Both the position numbers and the translations under genes were made by a program. From Salisapilia sapeloensis CBS 127946 (taxonomy: Eukaryota > Protista > Oomycota): 48,821 bases of DNA. Shown piece by piece: positions 8,333 to 14,274 of this stretch (within the stretch, counting starts at the first letter, position 1; the number at the start of each line of letters is the position of its first letter). The notes below the pieces were generated by a model, which did not search any database, was not told the origin of the DNA, and saw only the letters and a program-made list of their open reading frames with translations. The stretch spans positions 1 through 48,821 of the forward strand of contig JAADVB010000139.1 of assembly GCA_023334545.1 (NCBI GenBank), read 5' to 3'.

Positions 8333-8760
8333 TTCGATTTTCGTGTTTATACTTGAAAAATGTATACAGCCATAAATCCGTCGAATCTACCTACAGATCG
8401 TATCGGCATGCCAATCTCTCTCGTACGTCGTTTCTACCTCAAGAAAACACATTCGACTTGATGCACAATAGCTCTTCCCCATCTATCTCTGCTATATAGT
8501 ATTCTCTATTTCCCTCCTAAAATCGAACCACAGGTCATCACATCGCTCGTGTGCAACTAGCGATGGAAAATCAGACGTGTACGCACACAAGACGAGTCGG
8601 ATGGACCTATCGATTGGTTCCGACAGCCATCGACTCACCGCATGAATCTGACACTCGAGTCACTTCCTCCACCCTCTGTCAATTTCATCCAATCTGTACA
8701 TGTAAAAATCTTTTCTACCAATCAAAACCGACCGATCTTGAAACGAAAGCAAGTTGCTCT

Positions 8761-8776
8761 TCATTTCTGTTTTTGC
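8761..8776 (+). promoter_or_regulatory. Oomycete-type Inr+FPR core promoter of the ATP-grasp gene
   Basis: TCATT-TCTG-TTTTTGC fits YCATTYY plus a near MWTTTNC, 53 nt upstream of ATG 8814. Confidence 0.55.
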
Positions 8777-8813
8777 AACCTACCGCCCAGATCTTCAGTC
8801 CACTCTCTTCAGT

Positions 8814-11800
8814 ATGGGGAATACCACGTCTACTTCATCAACGAAAGGAAAATCTAGTCAGACTTCTGAAGTAAAGGAAGAACCACCAGTGGCGACAAAT
8901 GATGTTTCGACACATGAAAGTGAAGAAATTGATGAAGAAGGTGCTATGCCGGAATTTCAAGTCCTGTCGGCAGCACAGCGAAGTGTTACCTTTGATGAAC
9001 GACAGTGTGTGACCATCTCAAGTACTGCGCCGTTATCAGATTTCCGACCACTTCAACGCGCAGCGACGTACGATCCTCGACTACGCACGAAGAGGTCGTT
9101 GCTCACGGCGGATGATGTCATGCATCGACGCTTCTTCAACGCGCGAGAACGTCGTCGATCTGCTGCGGACGTGTCGTCGTCTATTGTCAGTACTTTGCAA
9201 AAGCCGAGTAAAGTCAAGGATGAAGTTTTGGAGAAGAAGAATGCCATTGTCGTCGTGGATCCGTTTTCCACCGGTACGACGCTTGCGCAGAAGGCATTAG
9301 CCAGGGGATATAGTGTTGTTGGCATTTATTCGGATACGTTGGAAGTTATGCAAGAACTTATTGCTCACGTACCGAAGGAGCTGTCCGCCCAGTTCACGAC
9401 GACACTCGTACACGATGCTAGTAACAGCGACAGCTTCGATGAAATCGTGGGCATGTTAAAGGACATGAGTGATAAAAGTGAGTTAAATATCATTGGTGTA
9501 CTTGCTGGTGCTGAAACAGGCGTCATGCTTGCCGATAAGCTCTCGGAGACACTGCACTTAACTACGAATGGTACCAAGGGCTCCGATGCTCGTCGAAACA
9601 AGTACAAGATGGGAGAAAAAGTCCGTAGTAGTGGTCTGCGTGCCGTGAAGCAACGTGCTGTGACGAAATGGTCTCAAGTCGTGGAGTTTGTGGAGCAGGA
9701 ATTGCAACCAGACCCGTTCCGAGTGATCGTAAAACCAGTCGAGAGCGCCGGTAGCGATGACGTGACGTTGTGCTACTCTATGGAGGACGTTCGTCGTGCC
9801 TTTGGTAACATCCAAGGTAAGATCAACTCTCTAGGTCTCGAGAACACCATGACGTTAGTCCAAGAATACTTGGACGGGACGGAATACGTCGTAGACACTG
9901 TCAGTCGCGACGGTGTGCACAAGGTCGTGGCTGTGTGGGAGTATGACAAGCGTGCTGTCAACAACGCACCGTTCGTCTACTACGGCGTCTTGCTTCGTCC
10001 AGCGTCGGGTCCGTTGGTCACTCCGATCGTCGACTACATTTTAAAAGTGGTAGACGCGTTGGAAATCAAGCACGGACCAGCACACGCCGAAGTCAAATTG
10101 ACACAAGCCGGAGAACCTTGTTTAATTGAGATCGGGTCTCGTTGTCATGGAGGAGGTGGCGCCTACCTCGATATTGTCAATCCTTGCATCGGATACAACC
10201 AAGTCGAGTGCACATTGGATGCATACTTTGATGCAGATGCCTTTGACGCTCTGCCGAAGAAGCCATCTACATTAAAGAAGCATGGCTGTGAAGCAATGCT
10301 CGTGTCGTATGAGCAAGGCAAACTCAAGAGTTACCCTGGTCTAGAAGAACTTCGAAGCTTGTCTTCGTACGTGACGGACTACATGATCCTCGAGGTCGGA
10401 GATGAACTTCCTATCACAGTCGACATGTACGGGACACCTGGAAGTATCTTGATGGTTCATGAGGATAAAGAAACCTTGGACCGAGACTATGCACGCATTC
10501 GAGAGCTTGAGCACGATGGTATGTACGACATCGAACCAACGAAATCTGATGCGGATGAAGAGAAGAAAGAGGTGGTTGTGGTCGTCGATCCTTTCACAAC
10601 TGGTGCAGTCGTGGCGCATCAGCTCATTGCGAGAGGATACGACTGCATCTGTGTCTACAGCGACAAACTAGAGAATGTGGAACACATTGCGAGTCTCATT
10701 CCCGAAGGACTCACACTGGAGTTTGCTGCCACCGTTGCGTACGACGGTGACGTCGCTGCAACCGCCAAGGCCGTACGCAACGCTGCCAAGCGTGTCGTGG
10801 ACAAGAGCGATGACTCACCCCCTCTCTCGCCACGCAGAAAGGACCAGCGACTAGTTAAAGCGGTCTTCCCGGGCGCAGAACTAGGTGTCCGGCTCGCCGA
10901 TGCACTCAGTGACGAACTCGGTCTCGTCGGCAACGAGCTCTCTCTCTCATCTGCGAGACGAGACAAGTACCTCATGGGCGAGAAATTACGCTCGAGTGGC
11001 GTTCGTGCTGTGAAACAAGTGAAAGCAACGTCGTGGGAAGAAGCAGAACACTTTATCACGCACGAACTCCAGCCAGAACCTTTTGAAGTCGTTCTAAAAC
11101 CTCTCGAGAGTGCTGGTACAGAAGATGTCGTGCTATGCATGTCGATGGAACAAGCGAAAGAAACATTTGGTAAGATCTTAGGGAAGATCAATGGTCTCGG
11201 GATTGCGAATAACGCTGTGCTCTTGCAAGAGTACTTGGACGGTGATGAGTACGTCATTGATACCGTCAGTCGAGATGGTAAACACAAGGTCGTTTGTGTC
11301 TGGAAGTACGACAAGCGTCGTGTAAATGACGCTGCATTCGTCTACTTTGGTCTCTCGGTTGTCCCATGCGAAGGTTTCATCCATGAACTCATCGAGTACC
11401 AGCTCCAAGTCCTCGATGCATTGGGTATTAAGAACGGACCAGCACATGGCGAAGTAAAACTATGTCGAGGAAGTCCTGTGCTCATTGAAGTCGGCGCCCG
11501 ATGCCATGGAGGTGAAGGTGCTTGGATCCCAATAGTCAACAAATGCGTCGGATATAATCAAGTCGACGCTGCCATCGACAGTATCCTCGATGCCGATGCT
11601 TTTGACAAGTATCCGGATCGTCCGACGCAATTGCTTGAACATGGATGTGAAGCCATGCTCGTATCGTACAAGGAAGGTATCCTCAAGTCCGTACCAGGTC
11701 TCGAGGAGATCATTCAGATGCCTGCTTTCTTAAAGAAAGAGATTTTTGTCTCGAAAGGAGATGCATTGCGACGTACGATTGATATGTTTTCGACACCAGG

Positions 11801-11897
11801 AAGTATCATGCTTACGCACAAAGATAAGCAAGTGCTTGAAGCGAATTTATCGAGGATTCGAGAACTTGAAATCGATGGACTCTTTGAGCTGGAGTAA
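8814..11897 (+). CDS. Tandem double ATP-grasp carboxylate-amine ligase (L-amino-acid ligase / NikS-like), N-terminal MGxxxS motif
   Basis: Single exon, 1027 aa from ATG 8814 (the ORF-track start at 8754 is TTG). Two full modules each carry VVVDPF(S/T)TG, GAE(T/L)GV.LAD.LS, ARR(N/D)KY.MGEK.RSSG, (V/L)KP.ESAG, QEYLDG.EYV.DTVSRDG, GPAH(A/G)EVK and LIE(I/V)G(S/A)RCHGG. Confidence 0.9.
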   Translation: MGNTTSTSSTKGKSSQTSEVKEEPPVATNDVSTHESEEIDEEGAMPEFQVLSAAQRSVTFDERQCVTISSTAPLSDFRPLQRAATYDPRLRTKRSLLTADDVMHRRFFNARERRRSAADVSSSIVSTLQKPSKVKDEVLEKKNAIVVVDPFSTGTTLAQKALARGYSVVGIYSDTLEVMQELIAHVPKELSAQFTTTLVHDASNSDSFDEIVGMLKDMSDKSELNIIGVLAGAETGVMLADKLSETLHLTTNGTKGSDARRNKYKMGEKVRSSGLRAVKQRAVTKWSQVVEFVEQELQPDPFRVIVKPVESAGSDDVTLCYSMEDVRRAFGNIQGKINSLGLENTMTLVQEYLDGTEYVVDTVSRDGVHKVVAVWEYDKRAVNNAPFVYYGVLLRPASGPLVTPIVDYILKVVDALEIKHGPAHAEVKLTQAGEPCLIEIGSRCHGGGGAYLDIVNPCIGYNQVECTLDAYFDADAFDALPKKPSTLKKHGCEAMLVSYEQGKLKSYPGLEELRSLSSYVTDYMILEVGDELPITVDMYGTPGSILMVHEDKETLDRDYARIRELEHDGMYDIEPTKSDADEEKKEVVVVVDPFTTGAVVAHQLIARGYDCICVYSDKLENVEHIASLIPEGLTLEFAATVAYDGDVAATAKAVRNAAKRVVDKSDDSPPLSPRRKDQRLVKAVFPGAELGVRLADALSDELGLVGNELSLSSARRDKYLMGEKLRSSGVRAVKQVKATSWEEAEHFITHELQPEPFEVVLKPLESAGTEDVVLCMSMEQAKETFGKILGKINGLGIANNAVLLQEYLDGDEYVIDTVSRDGKHKVVCVWKYDKRRVNDAAFVYFGLSVVPCEGFIHELIEYQLQVLDALGIKNGPAHGEVKLCRGSPVLIEVGARCHGGEGAWIPIVNKCVGYNQVDAAIDSILDADAFDKYPDRPTQLLEHGCEAMLVSYKEGILKSVPGLEEIIQMPAFLKKEIFVSKGDALRRTIDMFSTPGSIMLTHKDKQVLEANLSRIRELEIDGLFELE
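9240..11897 (+). repeat. Intragenic tandem duplication of the ATP-grasp module (about 9240-10530 and 10570-11897)
   Basis: Collinear motif-for-motif similarity of the two halves, partly visible in DNA (AATACTTGGACGGGACGGAATACGTCGTAGACACTGTCAGTCGCGACGGT vs AGTACTTGGACGGTGATGAGTACGTCATTGATACCGTCAGTCGAGATGGT). Confidence 0.9.
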
Positions 11898-11922
11898 CTC
11901 GAGAATGAAAATTTATTTTTAC

Positions 11923-14274
11923 TTACAAACTATGATGTTCGTCACATGCAGCTATCTTGCGGACGATACCGTCGTAACTACATTGTTGACAGTACCCTGT
12001 ACGCATGCGAGGTGCTGACGGTGGCTTTCGATGGGCTTGGAGAGCTGGTAGACGACGTGGCTTTACCTTGATGTCTGTGAGAAGCGTTGGCGGATACTTG
12101 TGCTGGATGTCATTGTCCCATTCGTTTCGGCGAGACATGGAGGTTGGGCGTTGAGGGAGGTAGCTCGGACTTTTATTCCCGCTGGTTGTTCGTCGCTTGG
12201 GCGAGGATACGGATGGGAGGGGCGTCTCGACTGCAGAGATGGATATGTTCGTTTGTACTTCGACATCTAGTAACGTTCGAGAGTGGCGAGGAGTAGTGCT
12301 GCGGGAGATCGGACTTGGTTCTCGAGAACATTTGATCGGAGGAAGAGGACTTTGAGGTGGTGATGGACGGGTTGGGACTTTCAGAGGCGATAGAGGATGC
12401 TCATAGAGTTTCAGATCACATTCTCCTACATTAGGCTCAAAGACAGGTTCAGGTGATGTCGGCCTTGATAAGGGTCTGTTCTTTTGCTTCACCTCGCACG
12501 ATTCACTCATCATAGAAGTTTCTGACCAATGCTCATTGTCTTTAGTATTGACATCGACGACATCGTTAGTCTGCGTGACTTCCTTTTCTGTTGTAGTGCT
12601 CTCTTCTTTCTCTGACAGAGTTTTGCTGATCTCTATGTCTTCATCTTCGACAAGTACCTCCGTAGTTATTACTTCTTTTGAGGGAAGTGCACATGCATCT
12701 ACTACGAGAAACACAACTTCAGTAGTAATGATACTGGTAAGTCTCGATGTAAAGACACTTGATGCATCCTCGGCGTCCTCATTCACATCTTCGTCAGGAT
12801 TCTCGATGACGCTATCCTTTTGTAATAAATCTAGACCATATTCGAACGAGTTCGGCACGTTTTCAGGGGTGAAGAAGTTGGGTAGTCTTGGTGTAAACAC
12901 ATTTGGTTTATGCGCCACATTCTTGCTCGGAATCTCGTCAAAGACGTTTGAGGTCAACGATTCCTGCAATTCGCTTTCACATATTTCCAATTCGGCTGAA
13001 ATAAACTCATTATGGATGACATCAGTACATTCCGGCACCAATACACTTGACTCAAGCTGTGCACTCTCTTTTTCTTCCTTACCAAGTACCTCCGAAACCT
13101 TTGCTTCCTGTGATCTTCTTGTATAAGGCTCCAGCACTGCTGAAACGAATTCTGTGGCGACTATACGACTATGTGATGGCTTAAAGACGCTTGATTCGTA
13201 CTCTAGATATACATGTTCTTCCTCCGTATGTACCTCTGAGGCACATACGTCATGAGGAGTGTTCATGTAAGGTTTGAGCAAGGATGAAACAAACTCAGTC
13301 GCGACGATACGAGTCACCGTTGGTATCGAGATACTTGATTCGTCGTCGACATTCTCGTGCGTAATTAAAAGTATCTCTGATACAATCCCTTGCTGTGATT
13401 CGTATGTGTAAGGTTCCAACAAGGCTGAAACAAATTCAGATGCGGCCACACGCAAAGGTGGTGGGGTCAAGATACTCGCTTCGAGCTCAACATTCTCATT
13501 CTCAGCTTCAAAAATCGATGTCAGACTACTCGTTCTTCTTTCCTTCCGGCTACTAGCCCTCGCGATAACAGGGATTTCAGTTGACATTTTGGCGGGACTG
13601 GCAGGTTCGCATACTTTTTGCGTCTCTTTCCATTCTGCCTGCTTTATGCCAGACTTTCCAACTTGAGCTCCCATCGAAGCTATCTTGGCAACTAAAACAT
13701 CGACAGTCGATAGGACTTTGGCCGTTGAATACCGATGAATAAGATCCCCATGTAATACATTTTTGGACTCTGTTAATGCATCACAATTACTTGTACTACT
13801 TTCGCGATGAGATTCTTGAATATGACCGATACACAAGCCTTTGTTACTTTTCTCATCGCTAGAACCCGAACGATCATAGCTCTCTCTTCTTGCAGACATT
13901 GACAGGTCTTTTACTATACTCTCATTCATGGTGCGTATGTACTCGATGCTAGACTTCTGATACTTCCCTCGAGAATCGCTCGTTACCTCCATCGACTTGC
14001 CAAGTGAACAAAGCACGGTGAAGATGCTATCATCGACAACGGACTGAGCTACACCCGCGACAGATACAAGCTCAGTGAAAACGTTAATTGCGTAGCTGTC
14101 ATTCACCGTATCATTCTCCAGGCTGTGGCGATGCGTTGCAATATCGCTCTCGGGCTTCATATCTATATCTCTTGAATGAGCTATTTCCTTAGAAATTGTT
14201 GACTTCATATCCTTCAAGACACCGTGGATAACGGTGAGAGGATCTCCAGGAGCATTGTCGACGTCCATATTCAT
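11923..14274 (-). CDS. Acidic, low-complexity repeat protein of unknown function (783 aa)
   Basis: Long uninterrupted ORF. Glu/Ser/Pro-rich, with internal 47-48 aa repeats and a short C-terminal CQQC...CDEHH motif. No family recognised. Confidence 0.7.
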   Translation of the reverse strand: MNMDVDNAPGDPLTVIHGVLKDMKSTISKEIAHSRDIDMKPESDIATHRHSLENDTVNDSYAINVFTELVSVAGVAQSVVDDSIFTVLCSLGKSMEVTSDSRGKYQKSSIEYIRTMNESIVKDLSMSARRESYDRSGSSDEKSNKGLCIGHIQESHRESSTSNCDALTESKNVLHGDLIHRYSTAKVLSTVDVLVAKIASMGAQVGKSGIKQAEWKETQKVCEPASPAKMSTEIPVIARASSRKERRTSSLTSIFEAENENVELEASILTPPPLRVAASEFVSALLEPYTYESQQGIVSEILLITHENVDDESSISIPTVTRIVATEFVSSLLKPYMNTPHDVCASEVHTEEEHVYLEYESSVFKPSHSRIVATEFVSAVLEPYTRRSQEAKVSEVLGKEEKESAQLESSVLVPECTDVIHNEFISAELEICESELQESLTSNVFDEIPSKNVAHKPNVFTPRLPNFFTPENVPNSFEYGLDLLQKDSVIENPDEDVNEDAEDASSVFTSRLTSIITTEVVFLVVDACALPSKEVITTEVLVEDEDIEISKTLSEKEESTTTEKEVTQTNDVVDVNTKDNEHWSETSMMSESCEVKQKNRPLSRPTSPEPVFEPNVGECDLKLYEHPLSPLKVPTRPSPPQSPLPPIKCSREPSPISRSTTPRHSRTLLDVEVQTNISISAVETPLPSVSSPKRRTTSGNKSPSYLPQRPTSMSRRNEWDNDIQHKYPPTLLTDIKVKPRRLPALQAHRKPPSAPRMRTGYCQQCSYDGIVRKIAACDEHHSL
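12860..13510 (-). repeat. Degenerate coding tandem repeat, 141-144 bp period, at least 4 copies
   Basis: (S/T/N)EF(V/I)S cores at 13429-13440, 13288-13299, 13144-13155 and 13000-13011 (spacings 141, 144, 144 bp), with DNA-level similarity between copies. Confidence 0.8.

What the first reader, a model, noticed from the sequence alone, without database searches (positions are those of the whole stretch)
8814..11897. Eukaryotic two-active-site ATP-grasp peptide ligase: a candidate NRPS-independent small-peptide synthetase
Seen: one intronless ORF with two complete ATP-grasp modules. Both keep the ATP-binding lysines (R-N/D-K, K-P), the QEYLDG hinge, HxE and the E-x-G-x-R catalytic loop. Known: E-x-(A/G)-x-R in place of the ExNxR of D-Ala-D-Ala ligases, together with an N-terminal VVVDP..TG strand, is typical of L-amino-acid ligases and natural-product amide ligases (BacD/YwfE, NikS). 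Vertebrate carnosine synthase is also an ATP-grasp ligase but is a different, animal-type protein. Inference: two intact sites could add two residues in sequence (tripeptide) or make two different dipeptides. No such product is known to me in oomycetes, which are poor in classical secondary-metabolite enzymes. There is no biosynthetic gene cluster around it.
Basis: partly seen in the sequence, partly recalled or inferred. Interest (0 to 1): 0.75.

Follow-up and report, generated by a model that had tools for sequence, protein, structure and literature searches.

The report
Two-headed amino-acid ligase of oomycetes
This is a real, transcribed, intron-free oomycete gene for an enzyme made of two complete bacterial-type amino-acid-joining units behind a regulatory tail; it is kept in every oomycete examined and in many marine protists, yet nobody knows what small molecule it makes.

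Summary
Window 8814-11897 (+) is one uninterrupted 1027-codon ORF with two complete L-amino-acid-ligase (LAL) type ATP-grasp modules that are 50% identical. Each module alone passes the curated NCBIfam PRK07206 threshold, and both carry LAL_C2.

In 69 two-module relatives, the four Mg/catalytic residues and both ATP lysines are kept in 69/69 first modules. In second modules they are kept in at least 66/69.

Probable RNA contigs cover exactly 8748/8783-11929 without a gap, so the gene appears to be expressed and unspliced. There is no gene cluster around it: the neighbours are COG7 and an acidic repeat protein.

The protein is a LAL-family ligase, not DdaF or BacD, and no characterised ortholog was found. 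But it is not a peculiarity of this genome.
- Full-length orthologs occur in all oomycete orders, obligate biotrophs included.
- They also occur in ochrophyte algae.
- Single-module kin with the same N-terminal tail motifs are common in protists.

The substrate loops of the two modules are nearly identical, and LALs are normally homodimers. My best reading is therefore a covalently fused LAL dimer that makes one or two closely related amides, probably under membrane and phosphorylation control. A sequential tripeptide synthetase remains possible (about 0.2). The product is unknown.

The parts
8814..11897 (+). Complete coding sequence, 1027 aa plus TAA stop, no intron
   Evidence: gapless transcript-like contigs 8748/8783-11929 in runs X2 and X4
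8748..11929 (+). Extent of the probable mRNA: 5' UTR of at least 31-66 nt and 3' UTR of at least 32 nt
   Evidence: table 8: the contigs end at the gene borders; k-mer depth is 227/194, against 46/32 for COG7 and about 4 for the downstream gene
8814..9239 (+). N-terminal tail, aa 1-142. Residues 1-94 are predicted disordered.
   Evidence: AF2 pLDDT below 50 for residues 1-94; no NCBIfam family
8814..8834 (+). MGNTTST, a candidate N-myristoylation signal (Gly2, Ser6)
   Evidence: An MG start is found in 29/29 oomycete orthologs. The motif reading rests on the established N-myristoyltransferase consensus; no myristoylation predictor was run.
8955..9002 (+). Tail motif A, copy 1 (F-x-x-L-...-R-x-x-T-F-D-E-R): a basophilic-kinase-type Thr59 that overlaps an RVxF-like R-S-V-T-F
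   Evidence: Conserved in oomycetes; related motifs occur in single-module protist kin
9042..9086 (+). Tail motif A, copy 2 (F-R-P-L-Q-R-A-A-T-Y-D-P-R), with Thr85 preceded by Arg at -3 and Leu at -5
   Evidence: F77 and L80 are nearly invariant in 51 proteins. GFxPLx[RK]xx[ST] is found in 47/69 two-module proteins and 7/38 single-module proteins.
9114..9143 (+). Tail motif B (D-V-M-H-R-R-F-F-N-A), the structured part of the tail
   Evidence: pLDDT 80-86 for residues 101-120; F108 nearly invariant; motif present in 37/69 two-module proteins
9240..10535 (+). Module 1 (aa 143-574): complete LAL-type ATP-grasp unit
   Evidence: NF005543 at 341.9 bits against cutoff 302; Pfam; pLDDT mostly above 90
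9732..9764 (+). Module 1 ATP lysine and P-loop, K307-V317
   Evidence: Aligns with RhiM/RizA K151 and P-loop S156-A158 (with residue roles from PMC13579937); K present in 69/69
10083..10151 (+). Module 1 catalytic stretch: H424-x-E426 ... E439-x-G-x-R443-x-x-G446
   Evidence: The spacing E-13-E-4-R-3-G is identical to RhiC E258/E271/R275/G278. E426 aligns with RhiM E268. All are present in 69/69.
9936..9986 (+). Module 1 omega-loop region, W375-G391, carrying E376
   Evidence: Position inferred from the LAL loop description. E376/K831 is a conserved charge difference between the modules.
10416..10445 (+). Module 1 C-loop region (T535-x-D537-...-P-G)
   Evidence: T535 in 69/69 and D537 in 64/69; lies in the LAL_C2 domain
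10536..10571 (+). Acidic linker of about 12 residues between the modules
   Evidence: pLDDT below 50 at residues 579-581; module borders
10572..11894 (+). Module 2 (aa 587-1027): complete LAL-type ATP-grasp unit
   Evidence: NF005543 at 343.6 bits against cutoff 302; best PDB match is the LAL 30vh, E 1.6e-48
10803..10850 (+). Ser/Pro-rich insertion found only in module 2 (aa 664-679), predicted disordered
   Evidence: Gap in module 1 in the alignment; pLDDT below 50 at residues 666-677
11097..11129 (+). Module 2 ATP lysine and P-loop, K762-V772
   Evidence: K present in 66/69 two-module proteins
11445..11510 (+). Module 2 catalytic stretch: H878-x-E880 ... E892-x-G-x-R896-x-x-G899
   Evidence: H, E and R in 69/69; the second Glu in 67/69, with 2 Asp

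Best explanation
The gene encodes a conserved, expressed stramenopile enzyme with three parts.

1. An N-terminal tail that is disordered over residues 1-94. It begins with a myristoylation-type Met-Gly and carries two copies of a basophilic-kinase-type Thr motif plus a short structured motif.
2. [quoted passage not shown]
3. A short acidic linker between the modules.

By homology, each module binds Mg-ATP and converts the carboxylate of an amino-acid-like substrate into an acyl phosphate. An amine then attacks it to give an amide, ADP and phosphate.

Stand-alone LALs work as homodimers, and the substrate-forming loops of the two modules are almost the same. I therefore read the tandem as a covalently fused dimer whose two sites work in parallel on the same or closely related substrates. 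In oomycetes the halves have been kept apart since the crown ancestor and differ at a few conserved positions near the site. The clearest are Glu376 versus Lys831, Tyr451 versus Trp904, Pro386 versus Ala841 and Ala425 versus Gly879. These suggest mild sub-specialisation.

The tail probably places the enzyme at a membrane and puts it under phosphorylation control.

Shown: the architecture, family membership, conservation of catalytic residues, probable transcription, and distribution. Inferred: the chemistry (by homology), parallel rather than sequential action, and the roles of the tail. Unknown: substrates and product.
For: Family:
- Each module passes NF005543/PRK07206 (342 and 344 bits against 302).
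- ATP-grasp_4 and LAL_C2 are each found twice.
- The best solved relatives are LALs: 30vh at E 1.6e-48, then BL00235, RizA and BacD.
- The AF2 model (pLDDT 84.8) matches BL00235 at TM 0.82.

Catalytic competence:
- K307, E351, E357 and E426 align with RhiM K151, E193, E200 and E268, whose roles are given in PMC13579937.
- The E-13-E-4-R-3-G spacing equals that of RhiC E258, E271, R275 and G278.
- These residues are kept in 69/69 first modules and at least 66/69 second modules.
- Both modules are under similar constraint, with mean pairwise identity among oomycetes of 67% and 70%.
- 31 of 40 listed differences from a sibling taxon about 95% identical are synonymous.

Fused dimer acting in parallel:
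- RhiM and RhiC are homodimers.
- Oomycete M1 and M2 share 135 conserved positions. Only 16 positions are conserved but different, and most of those changes are conservative.
- Single-module kin are common.
- In several algal proteins the two modules are each other's closest kin. A single ancient M1/M2 split is rejected (difference in lnL 670, p-AU 0.0005).
- pTM is 0.77 for the whole chain although 123 residues are disordered. This suggests a defined packing of the two modules.

Expression: gene-sized gapless contigs have depth 227/194, against 46/32 and about 4 for the neighbours.

Core rather than accessory:
- Orthologs occur in all oomycete orders, including the obligate biotrophs Plasmopara, Peronospora, Hyaloperonospora and Peronosclerospora.
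- The gene is single copy in this 22.4-Mb assembly.

Membrane link: an MG start in 29/29 oomycetes, and FYVE-fused single-module kin elsewhere (P0183 and P0223 carry PF01363).
Against: - No substrate, product or activity is known for any eukaryotic member, so the chemistry is inferred by homology only.
- Oomycete M1 and M2 have stayed distinct clades (support 100 each) since the oomycete ancestor. Their conserved differences include a charge reversal in the omega-loop. This would also fit two different steps.
- The nearest characterised relative by profile score, DdaF, and the pair RhiM/RhiC both work in two-ligase sequential pathways.
- The inter-module packing could not be inspected because no coordinates were available, and the complex test gave no verdict.
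- Runs X2 and X4 are only guessed to be RNA.
- Myristoylation and phosphorylation are motif readings.
Confidence: 0.45

Rival explanations
1. Sequential two-step synthetase. One module joins two building blocks and the other adds a third. This would give a tripeptide or pseudo-tripeptide without ribosome or NRPS.
For: - Both sites are intact and conserved.
- Oomycete M1 and M2 are separate, old clades with conserved differences next to the active site, including E376/K831 and Y451/W904.
- There are precedents. RhiM then RhiC build rhizocticin. DdaF, the closest named family at 180-208 bits, adds an amino acid to an already acylated one (plus established knowledge of dapdiamide biosynthesis). 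GshF fuses two ligases for glutathione (cited in PMC13338154). Carbamoyl-phosphate synthetase is a tandem ATP-grasp enzyme with two sequential sites and is the top Foldseek hit by E-value.
Against: - The P-, omega- and C-loops that form the substrate pocket in LALs are nearly identical in M1 and M2. A dipeptide-accepting site would be expected to differ.
- Many protists carry only a single module.
- In several algal two-module proteins the modules are sisters.
- The match to carbamoyl-phosphate synthetase reflects domain order only (TM 0.27, rmsd 21 A).
Confidence: 0.2
2. Oligomerising or macromolecule-modifying ligase. The modules add amino acids repeatedly to give a short homo-oligopeptide, or add them to a protein, peptide or lipid-linked acceptor at a membrane, rather than making a free dipeptide.
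For: - Membrane-targeting devices recur on the family: an MG start in all oomycetes and FYVE fusions in other protists.
- A weak RimK-family Pfam hit, E 6e-4, below the cutoff.
- From established knowledge only: some LALs, such as RizB, oligomerise amino acids.
Against: - The best profile and structural matches are free-amino-acid LALs, not RimK or tubulin-ligase types.
- The RimK score of 19.8 is below its cutoff of 21.
- No acceptor candidate is encoded nearby.
Confidence: 0.12
3. Only one module is catalytic. The other is a structural or regulatory pseudo-enzyme half of the fused dimer.
For: Fused duplicates often lose one site. A few second modules in other taxa carry substitutions, with K307-equivalent in 66/69 and E351-equivalent in 67/69.
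Against: - In this protein and in all 29 oomycete orthologs, both modules keep every ATP, Mg and catalytic residue examined.
- Both evolve at the same slow rate, 67% against 70% identity.
Confidence: 0.05

Closest known systems
Bacterial L-amino acid ligases of NCBIfam subfamily NF005543 (PRK07206), including the solved 419-aa 'L-amino acid ligase' PDB 30vh/30vq
   Same: Each module is a full-length member above the curated cutoff. It has the same A/B/C-domain ATP-grasp fold plus LAL_C2, and the same ATP, Mg and Arg residues. The aligned region appears roughly 40-45% identical to 30vh by eye (not computed).
   Different: - Two modules sit in one chain behind a eukaryote-specific tail of about 140 residues.
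- The gene is eukaryotic, single copy and not clustered.
- Bacterial kin found here are only 28-36% identical and patchily distributed.
- The source and substrates of 30vh could not be established.
RhiM (RizA) and RhiC, the rhizocticin ligases (PMC13579937)
   Same: Same family and the same catalytic residues, mapped residue by residue. They show that two LAL active sites can cooperate to build a tripeptide. They are homodimers, the likely template for the tandem.
   Different: They are separate proteins in a bacterial gene cluster with very different pockets. Similarity to the modules here is low (E 3e-8 for RizA).
DdaF, dapdiamide A synthase
   Same: It is the closest named equivalog by profile (180 and 208 bits) and an ATP-grasp amide ligase for small molecules.
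   Different: The score is far below the equivalog cutoff of 840, so this is not an ortholog. Public labels such as 'Dapdiamide A synthase' or 'ddaF' on eukaryotic kin are over-annotations.
BacD/YwfE and BL00235 (solved dipeptide-forming LALs)
   Same: Same fold (TM 0.70-0.82), the E-x-(A/G)-x-R loop and the LAL_C2 domain.
   Different: Sequence identity is 15-19%. The BacD equivalog scores 36 bits against a cutoff of 850.
Carbamoyl-phosphate synthetase large subunit (tandem ATP-grasp)
   Same: One polypeptide carries two duplicated ATP-grasp units that are both active. It gives the best Foldseek E-value for the whole model, 3.5e-29.
   Different: It belongs to a different ATP-grasp family (12% identity) and has a different spatial arrangement (TM 0.27, rmsd 21 A). 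It makes no amide-bond product.
Fungal ATP-grasp ligase of the E-64 pathway (PMC12568646)
   Same: A eukaryotic ATP-grasp enzyme that condenses a carboxylate with an L-amino acid in an NRPS-independent pathway (abstract seen).
   Different: It is a single module inside a fungal biosynthetic cluster. Its relationship to this family was not tested here.

Membership tests
L-amino acid ligase family (ATP-grasp_4 + LAL_C2; NCBIfam NF005543/PRK07206) | Profile score above the curated cutoff for each module taken alone | tested here: met
   NF005543 scores 341.9 and 343.6 bits against cutoff 302, over profile positions 2-414 of 416
L-amino acid ligase family (ATP-grasp_4 + LAL_C2; NCBIfam NF005543/PRK07206) | C-terminal LAL_C2 domain | tested here: met
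   PF18603 at 47 bits against cutoff 29.4, in two stretches
L-amino acid ligase family (ATP-grasp_4 + LAL_C2; NCBIfam NF005543/PRK07206) | ATP-grasp fold superposable on solved LALs | tested here: met
   The AF2 model matches 3vot at TM 0.82, 4wd3 at 0.74 and BacD at 0.70
L-amino acid ligase family (ATP-grasp_4 + LAL_C2; NCBIfam NF005543/PRK07206) | ATP lysines, adenine/ribose glutamates, two Mg glutamates and the catalytic Arg-x-x-Gly, in both modules | tested here: met
   Alignment to RizA/RhiM and spacing identical to RhiC; conserved in 69/69 first modules and at least 66/69 second modules
L-amino acid ligase family (ATP-grasp_4 + LAL_C2; NCBIfam NF005543/PRK07206) | ATP-dependent formation of a dipeptide from unprotected L-amino acids | not testable with these tools
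   Needs an enzyme assay
L-amino acid ligase family (ATP-grasp_4 + LAL_C2; NCBIfam NF005543/PRK07206) | Dimeric assembly, here expected as an intramolecular pseudo-dimer | tested here: inconclusive
   A whole-chain pTM of 0.77 suggests fixed packing, but no coordinates were available and the complex test gave no verdict
DdaF (dapdiamide A synthase) equivalog NF041595 | Score above the equivalog cutoff | tested here: not met
   180 and 208 bits against cutoff 840
BacD (alanine-anticapsin ligase) equivalog NF053745 | Score above the equivalog cutoff | tested here: not met
   35.7 and 37.1 bits against cutoff 850
Argininosuccinate lyase fusion PRK02186 (source of the public 'Argininosuccinate lyase 2' labels) | Score above cutoff and presence of a lyase domain | tested here: not met
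   84-88 bits against cutoff 625, covering the ATP-grasp part only; Pfam finds no lyase domain
Carbamoyl-phosphate synthetase-type tandem ATP-grasp | Same relative arrangement of the two ATP-grasp units | tested here: not met
   TM 0.27, rmsd 21 A and 12% identity despite E 3.5e-29
Animal carnosine synthase (CARNS1) | Orthology to CARNS1 | not tested
   No CARNS1 sequence was available by reference, and none appeared among the named hits

The most novel reading that the evidence does not exclude
The two modules act one after the other as a ribosome- and NRPS-independent assembly line. The product would be a still-unknown tripeptide-like metabolite, made at a membrane under kinase control and universal in oomycetes, including genome-reduced obligate parasites. 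That would be a core metabolite and a possible oomycete-specific drug target missing from current metabolic maps.
Probability: 0.2. Interest if true: 0.8.

Novelty: new variant of a known kind. Interest (0 to 1): 0.5.

Why it matters
Oomycetes have almost no classical peptide natural-product machinery. Yet all of them, even obligate biotrophs with stripped-down genomes, keep and apparently express this double ligase. That points to an unrecognised conserved small amide or peptide in their core physiology.

The family appears to be one bacterial-type enzyme taken up by eukaryotes (a single eukaryotic clade with support 99). It was fitted with a eukaryotic regulatory tail and, repeatedly or by conversion, doubled in tandem.

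No plant or animal protein appeared among the named hits. This absence was not tested directly. If it holds and the product is essential, the enzyme would be a candidate target against plant- and fish-pathogenic oomycetes. The enzyme is also a natural example of a fused LAL, of interest for enzymatic peptide synthesis.

The finding is not categorically new. The fold, chemistry and family are known, and the sequences already sit in databases as 'ATP-grasp domain-containing protein'.

Tried and rejected
- Complex prediction of module 1 with module 2 as separate chains gave no verdict (score 0.00, controls not run). It counts neither for nor against packing.
- I could not identify the closest solved structure, 30vh/30vq. 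The ids are not in the paper library. A 419-aa Pseudomonas abietaniphila homolog (L013) is only a relative, E 1.6e-78 and roughly 40% identical by eye. The TabS paper PMC3754701 is not held, and the penicillin-cascade paper gave no PDB link.
- Literature searches found nothing on function. These covered an oomycete or protist LAL and the locus tags PITG_20994, SDRG_04930, Poli38472_011923, PHMEG_0001729 and SPRG_20619.
- Gene neighbourhoods of bacterial kin gave no coherent pathway. In Hafnia L010 the neighbours are an AraC/DJ-1 regulator, an isochorismatase-family protein and hyp genes. In L003 they are a periplasmic binding protein and a histidine kinase. In Pseudomonas L013 they are a carbamoyltransferase-like fragment and unrelated genes.
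- The AU test on the full 95-row tree did not finish. It was rerun on 45 rows with LG+G4. The tested group was named after seeing the tree, which weakens the p-value.
- The Atlas search returned only unnamed 'ATP-grasp domain-containing protein' clusters.
- I rejected several public labels on orthologs as over-annotation: 'Argininosuccinate lyase 2', 'biotin carboxylase' and 'Dapdiamide A synthase'.
- The large representative-protein search and the third word search were not used, because no claim here rests on absence of relatives.


Full report
**Observation**

The window has one open frame on the plus strand from 8754 to 11897. Its first ATG is at 8814 and it ends with TAA at 11895-11897. 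The product is 1027 aa. The start is confirmed by comparison: all 29 oomycete orthologs examined begin with Met-Gly.

Pfam finds ATP-grasp_4 and LAL_C2 twice each, both above their curated cutoffs. The two halves are 50% identical over 440 residues, E 9e-163.

**Is it a real, intron-free, expressed gene?**

Two runs of the same organism (X2 and X4, guessed to be RNA) each hold one gapless, 100% identical contig, covering 8748-11929 and 8783-11929. These contigs stop at the gene borders. Their k-mer depth is 227 and 194, against 46 and 32 for the upstream COG7 gene and about 4 for the downstream gene.

Gene-sized contigs with gene-specific depth are what a transcriptome assembly gives. I therefore take the gene to be transcribed as one unspliced mRNA with short UTRs. 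The caveat is that the library type is not on record.

Runs of a second organism hold contigs about 95% identical. Of the 40 differences listed, 30 fall on third codon positions and 31 are synonymous. This indicates purifying selection. The assembly (22.4 Mb, 1365 contigs) has no second copy of the family.

**Family**

Each module alone scores 342 and 344 bits against NCBIfam NF005543 (PRK07206, a 416-position 'hypothetical protein' subfamily). That is above the cutoff of 302 and covers the whole profile.

The named equivalogs fail by a wide margin. DdaF scores 180/208 against 840, and BacD 36/37 against 850. The model behind the public label 'argininosuccinate lyase' (PRK02186) matches only its ATP-grasp part, at 84-88 bits against 625.

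The best solved relatives are all L-amino-acid ligases: 30vh/30vq (E 1.6e-48), BL00235, RizA and BacD.

An AlphaFold2 model built on 51 full-length relatives has mean pLDDT 84.8 and pTM 0.77. Its modules superpose on BL00235 at TM 0.82, on RizA at 0.74 and on BacD at 0.70. Carbamoyl-phosphate synthetase has the best E-value for the whole model. However, its TM is 0.27 and rmsd 21 A, so it shares only the order of two ATP-grasp units and not their arrangement.

**Catalytic competence of both modules**

The 2026 structural study of RhiM and RhiC (PMC13579937) assigns these roles:
- In RhiM, K151 and E193 contact the adenine, E200 the ribose, the P-loop S156-A158 the phosphates, and E268 Mg.
- In RhiC, E258 and E271 bind Mg, and R275 and G278 bind the substrate carboxylate.

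In the alignment with RizA (the same protein as RhiM), these residues fall on K307, E351, E357, the P-loop 311-313 and E426 of module 1. The spacing E426-13-E439-4-R443-3-G446 is identical to that in RhiC. Module 2 has the same residues at K762, E806, E812, E880, E892, R896 and G899.

In 69 two-module relatives these residues are kept in 69/69 first modules and at least 66/69 second modules. Among oomycetes the two modules are equally constrained, with mean pairwise identity of 67% and 70%.

**Distribution and history**

Full-length two-module orthologs at 55-68% identity occur across the oomycetes. They are found in:
- Pythium, Globisporangium, Lagenidium, Phytophthora and Nothophytophthora;
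- the obligate biotrophs Plasmopara, Peronospora and Peronosclerospora;
- Saprolegnia, Achlya, Thraustotheca and Aphanomyces.

Hyaloperonospora has it as split gene models. No listed protein exceeds 68% identity. The window's organism is therefore an oomycete that is not among the named records.

Two-module proteins at 40-47% identity occur in ochrophytes: Triparma, Undaria, Chrysophaeum, Aureoumbra and many metagenomic or MMETSP sequences. Single-module kin at about 45% identity are common. They include Saprolegniales paralogs, Symbiodinium, Pteridomonas, Spumella, Ectocarpus and a diatom-rich Atlas cluster.

Bacterial kin found by pattern scan are only 28-36% identical and patchy: Sorangium, cyanobacteria, Erwinia, Hafnia, Photobacterium and Streptomyces.

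In a maximum-likelihood tree of 95 modules, all eukaryotic modules form one clade (SH-aLRT 99) apart from all 20 bacterial rows. This fits a single bacterial origin, but bacterial sampling was limited and biased by the search patterns. Oomycete first modules (support 100) and second modules (support 100) are sister clades (support 98). The Saprolegniales single-module paralogs sit inside the first-module clade.

In several algal proteins the two modules of one protein are each other's nearest kin. A tree that forces one ancient M1/M2 split is rejected (difference in lnL 670, p-AU 0.0005, 45 rows, LG+G4). The group was defined after seeing the tree, which weakens this p-value. Either tandem doubling happened several times or the halves are homogenised by gene conversion. 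In both cases the two halves are functionally interchangeable in those lineages.

**The tail**

Residues 1-94 are predicted disordered. Residues 101-120 are structured, with pLDDT 80-86. Oomycete tails share four features:
- the MG(N) start;
- F-x-x-L-S-x-x-Q-R-x-x-T-F-D-E-R;
- F-R-P-L-x-R-A-A-T-(F/Y)-D-P-R;
- D-V-(M/L)-(H/Y)-R-R-(F/Y)-F-N.

The motif G-F-x-P-L-x-(R/K)-x-x-(S/T) is present in 47 of 69 two-module proteins. The D-V-x-Y-R-R-x-F motif is present in 37 of 69. Both also occur in front of several single-module protist proteins. The tail is thus a eukaryotic hallmark of the family and older than the oomycete tandem.

Reading Gly2 as a myristoylation site, and the Arg(-3)/Leu(-5) threonines as basophilic-kinase (CDPK/CaMK-type) sites, rests on established consensus motifs and is inference. 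Two single-module relatives carry a FYVE domain instead. That is a second, independent membrane-targeting device on the same enzyme, and it strengthens the membrane idea.

**How it most likely works**

The chemistry follows from family membership: an acyl-phosphate intermediate followed by amine attack. The open question is what the second site is for.

RhiM and RhiC are homodimers. Within oomycetes the two modules share 135 conserved positions. Only 16 positions are conserved in both modules but different between them, and most of those changes are conservative.

The P-loop, omega-loop and C-loop build the substrate pocket in LALs, and they are almost the same in the two modules. The omega-loops read WEYDKRAVNNAPFVYYG and WKYDKRRVNDAAFVYFG. 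The C-loops read TVDMYGTPGS and TIDMFSTPGS.

Three lines of evidence make a covalently fused LAL dimer with two parallel sites the best reading:
- single-module forms are common;
- modules are interchangeable in some algal lineages;
- a whole-chain pTM of 0.77 is hard to reach unless the two modules are confidently packed.

In oomycetes the long separation of the halves, and conserved differences beside the site, suggest related rather than identical substrates. These differences are E376/K831, P386/A841, A425/G879 and Y451/W904. I give this reading 0.45.

The sequential tripeptide reading keeps about 0.2. Its precedents are RhiM followed by RhiC, DdaF, GshF and carbamoyl-phosphate synthetase. 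An oligomerising or macromolecule-modifying ligase gets about 0.12. A half-dead pseudo-dimer gets about 0.05. The remainder is left unassigned.

**Context**

There is no cluster. Upstream on the minus strand is COG7 (166 bits). Downstream on the minus strand is an acidic repeat protein with no Pfam family. Neighbourhoods of bacterial kin gave no coherent pathway.

**Literature**

Nothing was found on a eukaryotic member of this family or on the ortholog locus tags.

**Verdict**

It is ordinary in fold and chemistry. It is unusual as a conserved, expressed, tail-regulated double LAL with no known product in a group poor in peptide natural products. I rate it a new variant of a known kind, with interest 0.5.

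Noticed in passing
window 11897-11929 and 11923-14274 (-): The probable mRNA of the ligase runs to at least 11929. The convergent downstream gene ends with its stop codon at 11923-11925. The two 3' ends therefore overlap by a few bases, a very compact convergent pair.
   Followed up: no
P0183 and P0223: Single-module relatives from unnamed protists carry an N-terminal FYVE domain (PF01363) in place of the myristoylation-type start. This is a second membrane-targeting device on the same enzyme family.
   Followed up: partly
P0143, P0150, P0154, P0165, P0168 and others: Single-module protist kin carry two or three repeats of the tail motif F-x-P-L-x-R-x-x-T-F / R-x-M-T-F-D-(E/D)-R before the ATP-grasp unit. 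The putative phospho-regulatory tail is family-wide in eukaryotes and absent from bacterial kin of about 410-420 aa.
   Followed up: partly
Public records of orthologs P0003, P0007, P0011, P0009 and P0148: Orthologs are labelled 'Argininosuccinate lyase 2', 'Dapdiamide A synthase', 'ddaF' or 'biotin carboxylase'. None of these labels is supported by curated cutoffs or domain content.
   Followed up: yes
window 9014-11871, runs X6 and X7: Large 2025 runs labelled organism B hold fragmentary contigs about 95% identical to the gene. This is probably a sibling species or strain sampled within a mixed (host or environmental) library.
   Followed up: partly
P0149: A 583-aa protein filed under an 'archaeon' MAG is 46% identical and looks like a piece of a eukaryote-type two-module protein. 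It may be a mis-binned eukaryotic contig.
   Followed up: no
window 8333-8813: The 481-bp divergent spacer between COG7 (-) and the ligase (+) holds a separate low-depth 285-nt contig at 8375-8659 in run X2. This could be part of a UTR or an unannotated short transcript.
   Followed up: no
L003:2236-4257: A Bdellovibrionota relative appears to carry an extra N-terminal region of about 250 aa before the ATP-grasp unit, if the longest ORF is the true gene. It is followed by an amino-acid-type periplasmic binding protein and a histidine kinase.
   Followed up: no
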